The notes beneath the pieces are model-generated. The model had not been told where the DNA came from. It made no database searches and saw only the letters and a program-made list of their open reading frames with translations. Made by a program: the position numbers and the translations under genes. Below, one piece after another: positions 877 through 23,553 of a stretch of DNA of 41,391 nucleotides. Every line of letters starts with the position of its first letter. Positions within the stretch are counted from its first letter, which is position 1. Source of the stretch: Octopus bimaculoides (taxonomy: Eukaryota); assembly GCF_001194135.2 (NCBI RefSeq), contig NC_069001.1, forward strand, positions 37,662,429 through 37,703,819. Reading direction: 5' to 3'.

Positions 877-975
877 AAGTTTTTTACTCCTTCTCTCTGA
901 AAAACAGAATAAAAGAAAAAGGGCGCACTTGAGGGAGAGGCTGATTTTCACCAGGACCGATTCCAGTTTGTCTGG
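877..975 (-). CDS. ABCC1-like: ABCC/MRP TMD0 coding exon 5 (33 aa)
   Basis: ttctgttttcag|CCA..CTT|gtaagt, 99 nt, phase 0/0. Encodes PDKLESVLVKISLSLKCALFLLFCFSERRSKKL; LFCFSER matches the MRP1 motif LSCFSDR at the end of TMD0. Confidence 0.8.
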
Positions 976-1044
976 CTGAAAACAGAAAATGGAAAACTTT
1001 TACTTCAGCCGTTAACTGAGACAATTAATTGTATTTATCTTTTA

Positions 1045-1160
1045 TCCTTTCCATGTTTCAGTCATTGGACTGTGGCCATGCTGGGTTTAGCCAAACAAAT
1101 TGACCCCACTATTCTTCTTTTGAAGTCTGATATTTATTCTTTTCATCTCTTTTGCCAAAA
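1045..1160 (-). mobile_element. 3' part of SINE family D/F
   Basis: CAGTCATTGGACTGTGGCCATGCTGG...TCTTTTGCC matches the tails of the copies at 24331 and 35095. Confidence 0.6.
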
Positions 1161-1163
1161 TAT

Positions 1164-1335
1164 TGGGGCACATTTGAGTGAGAGGCCAACAAAATTCCTT
1201 GTAACACCAAAGATGAAGTGAATTCAAGGATTATGGCAGCATTCACCAACTTAAAGAAGGAGAATGTCCAGAAAAATTTTTGCAGATTTTGAAGTCGTCT
1301 GGAGGGCATGGTTGGAGCCAATGGTGATTTTATAT
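1164..1335 (+). mobile_element. Tc1/mariner (maT/DD37D-like) transposase C-terminal relic
   Basis: Translates as WGTFE*EANKIPCNTKDEVNSRIMAAFTNLKKENVQKNFCRF*SRLEGMVGANGDFI, a typical maT C-terminus with two stops. Confidence 0.7.
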
Positions 1336-1395
1336 GTATATATACATATACATATAATGCACATATACATATATATATAATACACATATATATAT

Positions 1396-1431
<36 letters not shown>

Positions 1432-1699
1432 CTCAGGGTAGCAAAAAAAAATTTTAGAAATTCTATTTACTACCAGTGGTCTAGTGAGAAAAAAATTTAG
1501 TCAATAGACTATATATTATTCATTTAAAATACAGTGTATATATATTGGATAATAAAATTAATGGTTTATACCTGGTAGCTTACTGGTAAAGCACGGTCAC
1601 TTTTACAGTGATCGTTATGTATATGGCAAATGAAAGACAGAAGATGGAATATATGAGAATTTATTATTAATCGCAATTGCGTCAACACATCTAGCATCG

Positions 1700-1820
1700 A
1701 TCCCTACACACACACACACACACACACTTACCACCACCACTACTACCACCATCACTGCACTATTACTACAGCACACCACACTCCCCACCAACACCAACAC
1801 CACCACCACCACCACCACTA
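1700..1820. repeat. (CA)n and (ACC/ACT)n microsatellites
   Basis: Direct reading; starts about 12 nt into the intron after the ABCC exon 4 donor. Confidence 0.95.
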
Positions 1821-1831
1821 TCAAGACTTAC

Positions 1832-1963
1832 CTCAGCCTGCTTCTCCACAGCAAACAACCAAACAATATTTTCAAAAATGGCCAGCAGCCAATAGATGAA
1901 GTTCACACCAGATGTAAAGACTCTCTTCTTAAATTCCACATACTGCAGCACCAATGATAAAAC
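1832..1963 (-). CDS. ABCC1-like: ABCC/MRP TMD0 coding exon 4 (44 aa)
   Basis: ctttgtgtgtag|GTT..GAG|gtaagt, 132 nt, phase 0/0. VLSLVLQYVEFKKRVFTSGVNFIYWLLA aligns without gaps to MRP1 [28 protein letters not shown]. Confidence 0.9.
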
Positions 1964-2063
1964 CTACACACAAAGCACAAATATTAAGGGTTAAGAGGAT
2001 TTACAAGAATAACAGTTTAATGGTGTATCAGTTCAATGGATTAATTGTTCTATTGCACCAGGT

Positions 2064-2441
2064 GAGTGGTTCTCAGCCATTTTTTTTACCTATGCATCCT
2101 TTTGATTTCTGTTTCACTTAGATGAATGCCCATAGCTAATTGATGTCTAACTTTTTAGCATTTTAACTGGCCATATCTGACCAAAATATTATTGTACCTT
2201 CAAACTGGCCAGATCTGGCCTCTCACGCTTACACTACAATGTCATTCTAAAAATAAACAATCACATCTTTGAAATCTCAAAGCTACAAAGGAAATGCGTG
2301 ACTATTAGAAATCGTATTGAAAAAATTGTTAAGATATTTTGTGCCTTGTAGAGATGTAACCAATTTATTGGAGATAAATTTTAAGAACAAAATCTTACAG
2401 GAAATCCTAAGGACCATGTGAACCCTGGTTGAGAACCCCTG
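2064..2441. mobile_element. Old hAT-type MITE with a nested MITE (about 2150-2310)
   Basis: Left end GAGTGGTTCTCAGCC, right end GGTTGAGAACCCCTG; flanks caccaggt/caccaaac are only a partial TSD. The nested segment resembles 39205-39430. Confidence 0.5.
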
Positions 2442-2549
2442 CACCAAACAGTTAATGGTGAAGTGAAAATGATTGTTTGCGAACTGTTGATGGTGATAAT
2501 GATTGCTAGATGTTACAGAACCACCATGAGGCCCAGACTTCACCCTTGT

Positions 2550-20746: not shown

Positions 20747-21252
20747 AGAAAATACCAACAAACCAACAGGTTATGGGAAAAAAGAATCCTTGAGCATTCA
20801 AAAATACAAATGTATGTCACCATGGATATGGTTCAGGTCCCCCTTTGAGGACGATAGAGCATTCCAAGAGTTGCAGTGACATACATAAGGGGGTTGGAAT
20901 GAAAGAAATAGTTTAAAAAGGGGAAAAAAAGCCACGCTTATTAATGTCTGGGGTTTATTTTTTTAAACATGCAAACCGCGCTGTTTATACATTGTCTTTG
21001 TGTCATTTTTATTTTTGTAACATTTCTGTTTATTTATTTTGGCAGATGTCAGCGCCGGTGGTCCACATAAATTGGAATTTCTCCATTTCGACTGGGATTA
21101 ATTCAGATTTTTTTTTTCATGATGCCATTGACAATAATCTGGAACGTCTTTTTAGCAAAAAGAAAAAGTTTTCAAAAAGCGTTTTTTTTTTTCTTTACCC
21201 CTCTCCGGATCAATTTTGGTCGTTTTTGTGGGCACTAAAAACTTTTTGAAAA

Positions 21253-21892
21253 AAAAGTAAATATTTTCAGAAGAAAAGGTGTGTGATTAAAGGGAGATTT
21301 GACTGTTGTTTCTAGCATATCCCATCATCATTCTTCCCCGTTTCTTTCTCACTCTGACAAGTATTGATGTTTTTCAATATTTTCTTCCCATTAAGACGGT
21401 AAGCTGGCAGAAACGTTAGCAAACCAAGTGTCTCAGGTGTCTCAGTTGAGACACTTGCTGTTGAATTGACGTGTTTTTTCCTTTTCTTTTCTTTTTCTTT
21501 CTTCACTTAAGTGTAATTTCTTTGGTTTTGAATTTGTATTTTAATGTTTTTGCTTGGGTGGGGGTGANNNNNNNNNNAAAAGTAAATATTTTCAGAAGAA
21601 AAGGTGTGTGATTAAAGGGAGATTTGACTGTTGTTTCTAGCATATCCCATCATCATTCTTCCCCGTTTCTTTCTCACTCTGACAAGTATTGATGTTTTTC
21701 AATATTTTCTTCCCATTAAGACGGTAAGCTGGCAGAAACGTTAGCAAACCAAGTGTCTCAGGTGTCTCAGTTGAGACACTTGCTGTTGAATTGACGTGTT
21801 TTTTCCTTTTCTTTTCTTTTTCTTTCTTCACTTAAGTGTAATTTCTTTGGTTTTGAATTTGTATTTTAATGTTTTTGCTTGGGTGGGGGTGA
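21253..21892. other. Identical 315-bp direct duplication around a 10-N gap (probable assembly artefact)
   Basis: 21253-21567 equals 21578-21892 (offset 325), separated by N10 at 21568-21577. Confidence 0.8.
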
Positions 21893-21947
21893 GTACCTTT
21901 TATTGGAATATAACACCTATGTATATGAAACATATATAATACAAAAT

Positions 21948-22160
21948 AAAGGCGAGGAGTTGGCAGAAACGTTAGCACACCGAGCGAAAGGGTTAGCAGT
22001 ATTTCATCTATCTTTACGTTCTGAGTTCAAATTCCGCCAAGGTCGACTTCGCCTTTCATCCGTTCGGAGTCGATAAATTAAGTACCAGTTGCATACTGGG
22101 GCCAAACTAATCGACTGGCCCCCTCCCCAAAAATTTTGTGCCAAGAGTAGAAAAAAATAT
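21948..22160 (+). mobile_element. SINE family B, near full length
   Basis: GGCGAGGAGTTGGCAGAAACGTTAGCA..GTTCAAATTCCGCC..GCCTTTCATCC..GATAAATTAAGTACCAG. Confidence 0.9.
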
Positions 22161-22179
22161 TTTGGGGGTCTGCGCAAGA

Positions 22180-22680
22180 GCTTGTCTCTATCTCTTCCTT
22201 GTTTTCTTTCCTCCATCCATGCTTGCTCCTCTTTGGTAGGCAACATCCTCTCCTCTCCAACATGAACTAATTCCAACAGGGAGATGGATGAAGCTCTGCT
22301 ACAGTGGAGAGAGCTGGGTTTGTCAGATCCTGATACAGCTGAAGATAGACGGAAGCAAAGAGTATGTGACAATCAAGGTGTCGCCTACTTTCTGCTAGTG
22401 CAAAAATTCTCCAGAGACTAGATTGATGCCCTGCCTGTGACCAACATCGATGGTCTCTTCAGTGTAGATGAGCTCTCAGCATCACCATCGCATTCAGAGT
22501 GGGAGCCGACGTCTGTGGGGAACTGTGATGTCACTGGCAGTTCGCCTTCCCAATGTGCCAGACGATGCCCGTGAGGATATTGGGTTGTTCCAATGCCTTA
22601 GCCTCGCCATGGTCCGTCGTAATGCCTCAAACGTGCTGGTTGCTTCAGTAGGTTTCGTTGAACATTGCGGTGTGCGATCA
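22180..22680 (+). mobile_element. Internally deleted CRE-like (RLE-type) non-LTR retrotransposon 3' fragment
   Basis: RKQRVCD, SRD*IDALP, ITIAFRVGADVC, then LAVRLPNVPDDARE..LFQCLSLAMVRRNASNVL. These match the CRE-type motifs W..ALP..LRIA.ALR.G..VC and LFQR.S.A.QRGNA. Confidence 0.65.
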
Positions 22681-22800
22681 ACTGATACAGTTTTGACAGA
22701 AAGATTTGGAAGAATTAGATGAAAGGTCTCCGGTAATTTTCTTTCATGTAAATAAATGTTTATGTTGATTGAAAAATTCACTGGCAAAATCTTACAAAAC

Positions 22801-22972
22801 TGAGACACTTGCTGTTGAATTGGCGTGTTTTTTTCTTTTCTTTTTTCTTTCTTTATTTAAGTGTGTTTTCTTTGGTTTTGAATTTGTATTTTAATGTTTT
22901 TGTTTGGGTGGGGTGAGTACCTTTTATTGGAATATAACACGTATATATATATGAAACATTTATAATACAAAA
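22801..22972 (+). repeat. Diverged direct repeat of 21773-21945
   Basis: TGAGACACTTGCTGTTGAATTG..GGGTGGGGTGAGTACCTTTTATTGGAATATAACAC..ATAATACAAAA; about 90% identity by eye. Confidence 0.85.
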
Positions 22973-23044
22973 CATTAAAAATACAAATACAAAACCAGGA
23001 GAGAAAAAAATGGAGAAAGAGGAACAAAGAAAGATAGACAGATA

Positions 23045-23093
23045 CATGGAGAGATAGATAGATAGATAGATAGATAGACAGATAACTAAATAA

Positions 23094-23150
<57 letters not shown>

Positions 23151-23181
23151 AGATAGACAGACAGATAGATAGATAGATAGA
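23045..23181. repeat. (AGAT)n microsatellite
   Basis: Direct reading. Confidence 0.95.
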
Positions 23182-23499
23182 CTGATTTGATTTGGCCTTC
23201 AAGTTGTCTTTTGGTTAAAAATGAAACTGCTGCGTGCTAGTGTGTGAGAGAGAGAGAGAGAGAAAATATCTCATTAGGAGAAAAGTAGAGATGAATAAAG
23301 GGATAATGTGTAAAAAGAGAGATAGAGAATGAGTGGCGGGGTGGATGCTTCAAAAATGAACTTTTAAAGTTTTTAATGTTAGGAGACCTGAGAGAGGAAG
23401 GGACATTGTAAAACTCGGAAAACCTGGCTTTGTAGCATGAAAATGAAAAACAACTAAAGTAAAAAAAAAAAAGGAGTTTTTTCTTTCTTTTTGACTTAC

Positions 23500-23553
23500 C
23501 CAGAAATATCCCTGGCACAATAATGGAAACATGGGTACGTTTGAATTTGTCAT
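23500..23553 (-). CDS. ABCC1-like: ABCC/MRP first coding exon (18 aa)
   Basis: ccaacc-ATG ACA..TTC TGG|gtaagt encodes MTNSNVPMFPLLCQGYFW. It ends in W at phase 0, like MRP1 exon 1 (MALRGFCSADGSDPLW|). A second in-frame ATG is at 23532. Confidence 0.75.

What the first reader, a model, noticed from the sequence alone, without database searches (positions are those of the whole stretch)
877..23553. Hidden multi-exon ABCC/MRP transporter gene spanning the left 23.5 kb
Five minus-strand exons (54, 159, 117, 132, 99 nt) with canonical splice sites join in phase 0 into a TMD0 domain, with boundaries like those I recall for MRP1 exons 1-5. Exons 3 and 5 are absent from the ORF track. The sequence is strongly diverged: only 9 residues lie between FW and CLQNT versus 15 in MRP1, and the PDFT motif is missing. 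This suggests a fast-evolving, lineage-specific efflux paralog.
Basis: partly seen in the sequence, partly recalled or inferred. Interest (0 to 1): 0.7.

Follow-up and report, generated by a model that had tools for sequence, protein, structure and literature searches.

The report
Start of a diverged octopus MRP gene
The five small minus-strand exons are real and encode the first membrane domain (TMD0) of a multidrug-resistance-type ABCC transporter in Octopus bimaculoides. This is an ordinary kind of gene, unusually diverged, and the rest of it lies beyond the left edge of the window where I could not check it.

Summary
The window is Octopus bimaculoides chromosome CM046621.1. The five minus-strand exons (23553-23500, 4519-4361, 3559-3443, 1963-1832, 975-877) all have AG/GT splice sites and join in phase 0 into 187 stop-free codons.

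- **Family:** the peptide passes Pfam TMD0_ABC (42.9 bits, cut-off 27). It aligns to residues 21-195 of MRP1 and models as a five-helix bundle matching ABCC1/2/3 TMD0 (TM-score 0.72-0.76).
- **Each exon:** only exons 2 and 4 are significant alone. Exon 3 is the best of 74 splice-compatible candidates, and exon 1 the best of 719.
- **Intron positions:** they match those of the octopus MRP1 gene on another chromosome and of a Littorina ABCC gene.
- **Gaps:** all eight N-gaps lie in intron 1. No exon or reading frame is touched, but the exon 1 to exon 2 link rests on scaffolding.
- **Divergence:** it is 20-25% identical to octopus MRP1 and at most 30% to anything found. The PxFT motif is deleted.

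The linker, TMD1 and ATP-binding exons are not in the window, and I could not reach the left flank. "Transporter", "fast-evolving" and "lineage-specific" therefore remain untested. I rate it a new member of a known kind, of low interest.

The parts
23500..23553 (-). Exon 1 (54 nt): start codon and MTNSNVPMFPLLCQGYFW. A second in-frame ATG lies at 23532. CM046621.1:37685928-37685981.
   Evidence: It carries the near-invariant Cys and Trp of the family N-terminus (LC-x4-W) and ends exactly after the Trp, as in octopus MRP1 and Littorina. It ranks 1 of 719 ATG..GT phase-0 candidates in 4520-41391 on the minus strand, with a margin of about 2 bits. The motif followed by a GTRAG donor occurs once in the window on both strands, against 0.005 expected from shuffles.
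4520..23499 (-). Intron 1, about 19 kb (length estimated). It holds all eight N-gaps of the range, a decayed retrotransposon fragment, SINE-like copies and an assembly duplication.
   Evidence: gtaagt donor and pyrimidine tract with tag acceptor. Gap flanks. RVT_1 at E 1e-16 with stops, at about 6300-7400 minus strand. The 315 nt on each side of the gap at 21568-21577 are identical.
4361..4519 (-). Exon 2 (159 nt): the short extracellular N-terminal segment, TM1, and the loop up to the invariant Lys.
   Evidence: Best six-frame hit in the window to the homologue-only TMD0 profile (E 9e-10, profile positions 28-89). It ends one residue after the invariant Lys, as in both comparators. An in-frame TAG sits immediately upstream.
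3443..3559 (-). Exon 3 (117 nt): TM2 and the following loop.
   Evidence: Not significant alone (E 23). It adds 22.6 bits to the joined protein and ranks 1 of 74 candidates, the next independent candidate scoring 79.6 against 92.8 bits. Its 3' boundary falls 18 residues before the invariant Ser, as in both comparators.
1832..1963 (-). Exon 4 (132 nt): TM3, the E-x-K-K-x-x-x-TSG motif and TM4.
   Evidence: Second significant six-frame hit (E 3e-6, profile positions 116-162). Its boundaries are within one residue of those in the comparators, all in phase 0.
877..975 (-). Exon 5 (99 nt): TM5, ending CFSERRSKKL.
   Evidence: Adds 10.4 bits. The acceptor at 975 is the best of 115 candidates. The profile cannot separate donors at 877, 873 and 845. 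I prefer 877 because it reads CTT|gtaagt and keeps phase 0 as in the comparators.
1..876 (-). Start of intron 5. It holds no further ABCC exon, and the gene runs off the left edge of the window.
   Evidence: The ABCC profile covering TMD0 through NBD1 finds nothing here. The sequence is a SINE-like element at 600-810 plus simple repeats.

Best explanation
Window 877-23553 (minus strand) holds the first five coding exons of an MRP-type ('long') ABCC gene of Octopus bimaculoides. They encode the TMD0 domain: a short extracellular N-terminus and five membrane helices.

By analogy with ABCC1/2/3, the rest of the gene should lie downstream, to the left of the window. It would comprise the L0 linker, two six-helix membrane domains and two ATP-binding domains. 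The product would be an ATP-driven exporter of organic anions and conjugates, with TMD0 serving trafficking or partner contacts rather than transport itself.

Shown here: the exons, the splice phases, the domain identity, the conserved intron positions, the predicted fold and the divergence. Inferred: that the downstream exons exist, that the gene is transcribed and spliced as drawn, and its transport function.
For: - The window is O. bimaculoides GCA_001194135.2 CM046621.1.
- The exons have canonical splice sites and 187 open codons.
- Pfam TMD0_ABC scores above its gathering cut-off.
- phmmer against the PDB aligns residues 17-183 to MRP1 residues 21-195, and also hits MRP3.
- The best hits among 1.84 billion cluster representatives are mollusc MRP1-like proteins from Haliotis, Ylistrum, Mercenaria, Solemya, Littorina and Mya.
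- Every exon raises the homologue-profile score and ranks first among the alternatives.
- The exon 1 motif is unique in the window.
- The first four introns fall at the same alignment positions (intron 4 within one residue), and intron 5 a few residues apart at the domain's end; all are phase 0, as in octopus MRP1 (45/186/120/129/126 nt) and a Littorina ABCC gene (33/180/132/129/114 nt).
- The AlphaFold model has pLDDT 80 and pTM 0.73, with five helices. Its best PDB matches are the TMD0 of ABCC1/2/3, then Ycf1 and SUR.
Against: - No L0, TMD1 or NBD exon is in the window, and the left flank could not be read.
- No called gene of the assembly's annotation overlaps exon 1.
- No protein in the searched collections contains this peptide. 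These negatives are weak for long proteins.
- It is the most divergent of 43 TMD0s. It lacks the PxFT motif, has Arg at a Gly conserved in 90% or more of the aligned sequences, and has no N-x-S/T sequon in the N-terminal segment.
- The exon 1 to exon 2 link crosses eight assembly gaps.
- The structure model used an alignment of ABCC TMD0s, so it is not independent evidence.
Confidence: 0.75

Rival explanations
1. It is an unprocessed pseudogene or a truncated partial duplicate. The TMD0 exons of an old ABCC copy survive, but the copy is no longer joined to working downstream exons or is no longer expressed.
For: It is the most divergent of 43 TMD0s and has the second-longest branch in a neighbour-joining tree. 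A conserved motif is deleted and a conserved Gly is replaced. No called gene overlaps exon 1. No transcript-derived protein with this peptide is in the collections. The downstream exons are unverified.
Against: There are 187 codons without a stop in AT-rich DNA. By my own estimate from base composition, random sequence of this composition stays open with a probability of about 1e-6. All nine splice signals are canonical and four of five donors are gtaagt or gtgagt. Five hydrophobic helices and the family's conserved Cys, Trp, Cys, Pro, Lys, TSG and CFSE positions are kept. At 20-30% identity, a neutrally drifting copy should have lost its frames and splice sites.
Confidence: 0.19
2. It is a stand-alone TMD0-only protein, made from these five exons alone by read-through into intron 5 or by an alternative last exon.
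For: Reading past the exon 5 donor gives a stop after 11 further codons. A TMD0-only model is annotated in Littorina.
Against: The Littorina model is an annotation split. An RVT_1/RNase_H insertion separates it from the ABC_membrane/ABC_tran model immediately downstream. Exon 5 here ends in a strong gtaagt donor at the conserved phase-0 position. To my knowledge, no free-standing TMD0 gene family has been described.
Confidence: 0.04
3. The open frames and splice-like dinucleotides in repeat-rich DNA are a chance arrangement.
For: Exons 1, 3 and 5 are not individually significant (E 23, 23 and 1.1).
Against: Exons 2 and 4 are significant alone and lie in the right order on the same strand. The joined peptide passes Pfam's curated cut-off. 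The intron positions match those of two real genes. The candidate rankings and the shuffle test point the same way.
Confidence: 0.01

Closest known systems
Octopus bimaculoides 'multidrug resistance-associated protein 1' (P0108; gene on CM046620.1, locus L003)
   Same: Same species. It has a TMD0 of five helices. Exon 1 ends after the Trp, exon 2 one residue after the invariant Lys, exon 3 eighteen residues before the invariant Ser, and exon 4 within one residue of the window gene's boundary; exon 5 ends six residues later. All are in phase 0.
   Different: It lies on a different chromosome. Identity in TMD0 is only 20% (multiple alignment) to 25% (BLASTP). P0108 keeps the PQFT motif and N-x-S/T sequons, and it is 33-46% identical to most other mollusc MRP1-like TMD0s (20% and 27% to Littorina and Mya). 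The window peptide is 17-28% identical to them.
Mollusc MRP1-like proteins: Haliotis rubra XP_046560393.1 (P0001), Ylistrum balloti XP_060079836.1 (P0003), Solemya velum KAL5009943.1 (P0007)
   Same: These are among the best sequence matches found anywhere (E 5e-6 to 1e-4). They align over residues 26-185, and the two long ones are full-length 1541-1549 aa ABCC transporters.
   Different: Identity is 28-30%. They carry about six more residues, including PxFT, between the FW and the CFQ motif.
Littorina saxatilis V1264_014965 (P0002), a TMD0-only gene model
   Same: It has the same five-exon, all-phase-0 layout of TMD0. It shows how a TMD0 can be annotated apart from the rest of its ABCC gene.
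   Different: Identity is 23-29%. There, the remaining ABC_membrane/ABC_tran exons are visible 5.6 kb downstream, after a retroelement insertion. Here the downstream region is outside the window.
Vertebrate ABCC1/ABCC2/ABCC3 (MRP1-3) TMD0, e.g. PDB 9j9f, 8vux, 8jx7, 8hvh
   Same: Sequence alignment covers the whole domain, query 17-183 against MRP1 21-195. The predicted fold matches at TM-score 0.72-0.76 and rmsd 2.7-3.7 A.
   Different: Identity is 20-25%. The N-terminal segment is shorter, lacks the PDFT motif, and has no N-x-S/T sequon in the stretch aligned with DWNVTWNTSNPDFT, the stretch that from memory carries MRP1's two N-glycosylation sites.

Membership tests
ABCC subfamily, 'long' MRP type (ABCC1/2/3/6-like) | An N-terminal TMD0 domain recognised by the curated family model (Pfam PF24357 TMD0_ABC) | tested here: met
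   42.9 bits against a gathering cut-off of 27, E 7e-11, residues 27-150 on profile positions 22-146 of 159.
ABCC subfamily, 'long' MRP type (ABCC1/2/3/6-like) | Five transmembrane helices folding as the TMD0 bundle | tested here: met
   The model has helices at 27-55, 65-90, 96-123, 129-150 and 157-183, with pLDDT 80.1. The top 41 PDB matches are the TMD0 of ABCC1/2/3 and Ycf1. This is a prediction made with an ABCC alignment, so it is not independent.
ABCC subfamily, 'long' MRP type (ABCC1/2/3/6-like) | Intron positions and phases of the TMD0 exons shared with bona fide ABCC1-like genes | tested here: met
   The first four introns match octopus MRP1 and a Littorina ABCC gene, exactly or within one residue; the fifth lies one to six residues apart. 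All are in phase 0.
ABCC subfamily, 'long' MRP type (ABCC1/2/3/6-like) | Conserved N-terminal motifs: C-x3-5-[FL]W, PxFT, CFQ | tested here: inconclusive
   The Cys and Trp of the first motif and C-L-Q-N-T are present. PxFT is deleted, with 9 residues in place of about 15. These motifs are conserved but do not define the family.
ABCC subfamily, 'long' MRP type (ABCC1/2/3/6-like) | L0 linker, two ABC_membrane domains and two ABC_tran ATP-binding domains with Walker A/B and signature motifs | not testable with these tools
   None is in the window on either strand. The gene leaves the window at position 1, and attempts to fetch the left flank failed.
ABCC subfamily, 'long' MRP type (ABCC1/2/3/6-like) | Transcription and splicing as modelled, and ATP-dependent substrate export | not testable with these tools
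   No RNA data were available here. No protein containing the peptide is in the searched collections.
SUR (ABCC8/9) and ABCC10 TMD0 types | A closer match to SUR or ABCC10 TMD0 than to MRP1-3 | tested here: not met
   SUR chains match the model only at TM-score 0.49-0.60 and E of 0.03 or worse, behind all MRP1-3 and Ycf1 entries. The only PDB sequence hits with E below 0.1 are MRP1 and MRP3.

The most novel reading that the evidence does not exclude
This may be a working, cephalopod-specific ABCC paralogue missing from current gene sets. Its outward-facing N-terminus has been remodelled: the PxFT motif and all N-x-S/T glycosylation sequons are lost. Its TMD0 has diverged further than that of any other MRP-type sequence sampled, which would hint at a changed partner or trafficking role for TMD0 in octopus.
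Probability: 0.25. Interest if true: 0.3.

Novelty: new member of a known kind. Interest (0 to 1): 0.17.

Why it matters
This is mainly an annotation result. It gives a supported five-exon model for the start of an ABCC gene in the O. bimaculoides chromosome assembly, at CM046621.1:37,663,305-37,685,981 on the minus strand. At least the first exon lies outside every called gene there. ABCC pumps handle toxins, metals and conjugates in molluscs, so a complete family list matters for ecotoxicology and comparative work. A TMD0 this diverged would also be a useful natural variant for asking what TMD0 does. It does not reveal a new kind of system.

Tried and rejected
- **Word-indexed protein search with the 187-aa peptide:** no hit. 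With the TMD0 alignment it returned only three short proteins. That tool listed no protein longer than 781 aa, so its negatives do not exclude a full-length annotated ABCC.
- **Search with an L0-TMD1 alignment, to find the octopus model left of the window:** one O. bimaculoides protein appeared among the 120 listed (P0108), and it is on another chromosome.
- **Exact look-ups of two left-end ORFs (113-499 minus, 105-464 plus), to extend the sequence leftwards:** neither is on record.
- **Rfam scan of the window:** nothing.
- **Literature search for octopus ABCC genes:** nothing specific.
- **Pfam on isolated ORFs of intron 1:** nothing. The RVT_1 hit appeared only when I joined one frame across its stops.
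- **Longer exon 2 restoring PxFT:** rejected, because an in-frame TAG abuts the acceptor.
- **Other first exons:** the next-best independent candidates (13635-13591 and 10323-10291) score about 2-3.5 bits lower and lack the Cys...Trp motif.
- **Neighbour-joining placement of the peptide:** it groups with other long branches (P0009, P0010, P0004). I read this as long-branch attraction and do not use it.
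Full report
**Where the window comes from.** The intact zinc-finger ORF at 31985-33358 is on record on one contig only, CM046621.1 of assembly GCA_001194135.2. The same assembly carries a protein that NCBI names as Octopus bimaculoides. The fetched locus is identical to window 21985-41391. Window position p therefore corresponds to record position p + 37,662,428. The DNA is about 36% G+C, full of (TA)n and (TG)n microsatellites and SINE-like copies, and has twelve N runs.

**The observation.** On the minus strand the five stated intervals have the stated lengths. 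The four internal exons begin after an AG preceded by a pyrimidine tract. All five end before GT, and four of those donors read gtaagt or gtgagt. Joined, they give 561 nt in phase 0 and 187 codons without a stop. An in-frame TAG directly precedes exon 2, so that exon cannot be extended upstream.

**The gaps, tested first.** The finding's range contains eight N runs. Six were listed by the scan's program. The two 10-N runs at 20437-20446 and 21568-21577 were not.
- All eight lie in intron 1 (4520-23499).
- Exons 2-5 sit on one uninterrupted stretch (1-8588) and exon 1 on the stretch 21578-23849. No exon, splice site or reading frame depends on a gap.
- The nearest gaps to a splice site are 1.9 kb and 4 kb away. 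Another gap begins about 300 nt upstream of the start codon.
- Four gaps (8589, 9227, 12911, 16545) have the same microsatellite on both sides.
- The gap at 21568 is flanked by two 100% identical copies of 315 nt, which is an unmerged contig overlap. These five gaps look continuous.
- Three gaps (14126, 19036, 20437) end in (TA)n on the left only, so what they hide is unknown.
- The roughly 19 kb length of intron 1, and the order and orientation of the exon 1 piece, therefore rest on the scaffolding.

**What the peptide is.**
- Pfam gives one family, TMD0_ABC (PF24357), at 42.9 bits against a cut-off of 27, covering residues 27-150.
- Against PDB sequences, the only hits with E below 0.1 are MRP3 and MRP1, with query 17-183 aligned to MRP1 21-195 at E about 0.01.
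- A full HMMER scan of 1.84 billion cluster representatives gives only 11 hits, with 24-30% identity. The named ones are mollusc MRP1-like proteins from Haliotis, Ylistrum, Mercenaria, Solemya, Littorina and Mya.
- An AlphaFold model built on the 12-sequence alignment has pLDDT 80 and five long helices. Its best PDB matches are the TMD0 of ABCC1, ABCC2 and ABCC3 (TM-score 0.72-0.76), then yeast Ycf1, then SUR more weakly. The alignment came from the same family, so I treat the model as a consistency check only.

**Is each exon supported?** I built a profile from the N-termini of the 11 foreign hits only and scanned all six frames of the window. Exon 2 (E 9e-10) and exon 4 (E 3e-6) are the only significant segments, and they lie in the right order on the right strand. 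Exons 5, 3 and 1 are in the noise alone (E 1.1, 23 and 23). I then scored joined proteins, as follows.

| Model | Score (bits) |
|---|---|
| All five exons | 92.8 |
| Without exon 1 | 87.7 |
| Without exon 5 | 82.4 |
| Without exon 3 | 70.2 |

- Exon 3 is the best of the 74 AG..GT, phase-compatible, open candidates between exons 2 and 4. The next independent candidate scores 79.6 bits.
- The exon 5 acceptor at 975 is the best of 115 candidates downstream of exon 4. The profile cannot choose between donors at 877, 873 and 845.
- Exon 1 is the best of 719 ATG..GT phase-0 candidates upstream of exon 2 in the window, though only by about 2 bits.
- Exon 1 also carries the two near-invariant residues of the family's N-terminus, a Cys and a Trp four to six residues later, with the intron directly after the Trp.
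- That pattern, followed by a GTRAG donor and preceded by an in-frame ATG, occurs once in the window on both strands. Mononucleotide shuffles give 0.005 per window. I defined the pattern after seeing the family alignment, so this number is indicative rather than exact.

**Gene structure compared with real genes.** The table gives exon lengths in nt. All exons are in phase 0.

| Gene | Exon 1 | Exon 2 | Exon 3 | Exon 4 | Exon 5 |
|---|---|---|---|---|---|
| Window gene | 54 | 159 | 117 | 132 | 99 |
| Octopus MRP1 (P0108, CM046620.1) | 45 | 186 | 120 | 129 | 126 |
| Littorina saxatilis (P0002) | 33 | 180 | 132 | 129 | 114 |

In all three genes exon 1 ends right after the Trp, exon 2 one residue after the invariant Lys, and exon 3 exactly 18 residues before the invariant Ser of the TSG motif. 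Exon 4 ends 22-23 residues after the invariant Phe, and exon 5 a few residues after CF[AS][ED]. Octopus MRP1 then has a 66-nt exon of the 'KPNPELEASFL' type. This is the strongest independent support for the model.

**Divergence.**
- The peptide is 25% identical to octopus MRP1 by BLASTP and 20% in a multiple alignment.
- Among 43 complete TMD0s it has the lowest median identity to the others, 22.9% against 25-37%. It also has the second-longest terminal branch in a neighbour-joining tree.
- Octopus MRP1 is 33-46% identical to most of the mollusc-like sequences compared (20-29% to three of them). This peptide is 17-28% identical to them.
- About six residues including PxFT are missing between FW and the CFQ-type motif, and a Gly conserved in 90% or more of the aligned sequences in the E-x-K-K-G motif is Arg here.
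- The N-terminal segment has no N-x-S/T sequon (read directly from the peptide).
- The Cys, Trp, Cys, Pro, Lys, TSG, Phe and CFSE positions and all five hydrophobic helices are kept.
- TMD0 is a weakly conserved domain in general. This sequence is therefore an extreme of a broad range, not a different thing.

**What is missing.** A profile spanning TMD0, L0, TMD1 and NBD1, built from 60 ABCC proteins, finds only exons 2 and 4 in the whole window on either strand. Nothing ABCC-like lies in 1-876. The rest of the gene, if it exists, is to the left of the window. I could not fetch that DNA:
- Two exact look-ups of left-end ORFs found no record.
- The last protein search returned only the paralogue on the other chromosome.

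No called gene of the assembly's annotation overlaps exon 1. The protein searches do not settle whether exons 2-5 belong to an annotated model. The word-indexed tool showed no protein longer than 781 aa. The representative library holds one sequence per 50%-identity cluster, so a full-length protein could be represented there by a relative whose TMD0 differs.

**Interpretation.** The most likely reading (0.75) is the genuine 5' end of an MRP-type ABCC gene that continues off the window. The main rival (0.19) is a pseudogene or truncated duplicate. Intact frames, nine canonical splice signals, conserved intron positions and preserved helices at 20-30% identity all argue that selection acted on this sequence at least until recently. 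Only downstream sequence, transcripts or an orthologue comparison can settle it. A TMD0-only product (0.04) and chance (0.01) are unlikely. The Littorina 'TMD0-only' model is an annotation split caused by a retroelement, with the ABC domains following 5.6 kb downstream.

**Verdict.** It is a new and diverged member of a very well known family, so interest is low.

Noticed in passing
window 21253-21892: The 315 nt left of the 10-N gap (21253-21567) are 100% identical to the 315 nt right of it (21578-21892). This is an unmerged contig overlap, so the assembly carries an artefactual duplication inside intron 1.
   Followed up: yes
window 20437-20446 and 21568-21577: Two further 10-N gaps lie inside the finding's range but were not in the list added by the scan's program. 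Both are in intron 1.
   Followed up: yes
window about 6300-7400, minus strand: A decayed non-LTR retrotransposon reverse-transcriptase fragment lies in intron 1, in the same orientation as the ABCC gene. Pfam RVT_1 scores E 1e-16 on one frame read across stops.
   Followed up: partly
window 31985-33358 (+) and 38607-38930 (+): There is an intact single-exon 457-aa C2H2 zinc-finger gene, with 14 finger matches. It is called in the assembly's annotation and is divergently oriented 8.4 kb upstream of ABCC exon 1. A two-finger remnant lies further right.
   Followed up: partly
window 600-810, 4055-4200, 11291-11392, 20005-20174, 21999-22089, 34250-34307: Six copies, 75-84% identical, of a SINE-like element of about 150-210 nt. 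One sits in intron 2 and one in intron 5 of the ABCC gene.
   Followed up: partly
window gaps 8589, 9227, 12911, 14126, 16545, 19036, 20437, 24828, 35831; also 30000-30031: Nearly all N-gaps abut (TA)n or (TG)n microsatellites, which explains why the assembly broke there. The gap at 30000 sits inside a poly-G run. A 21-nt tandem repeat (CACTCGCCGAGTAATGGAACT) starts right of the gap at 35831-36541.
   Followed up: partly
L002 (Littorina saxatilis CM074561.1) 10001-29940: The Littorina TMD0 is annotated as a separate 218-aa 'hypothetical protein'. Its last codons run into a donor site read as a stop. RVT_1 and RNase_H genes, and then a 2058-aa ABC_membrane/ABC_tran model, follow downstream. This is probably one ABCC gene split by a retroelement.
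   Followed up: partly
L003 (O. bimaculoides CM046620.1) 3001-42996: The annotated octopus 'MRP1' product is only 741 aa and stops inside NBD1. Another called gene starts 1.1 kb further on, so this paralogue also looks split in the annotation.
   Followed up: no
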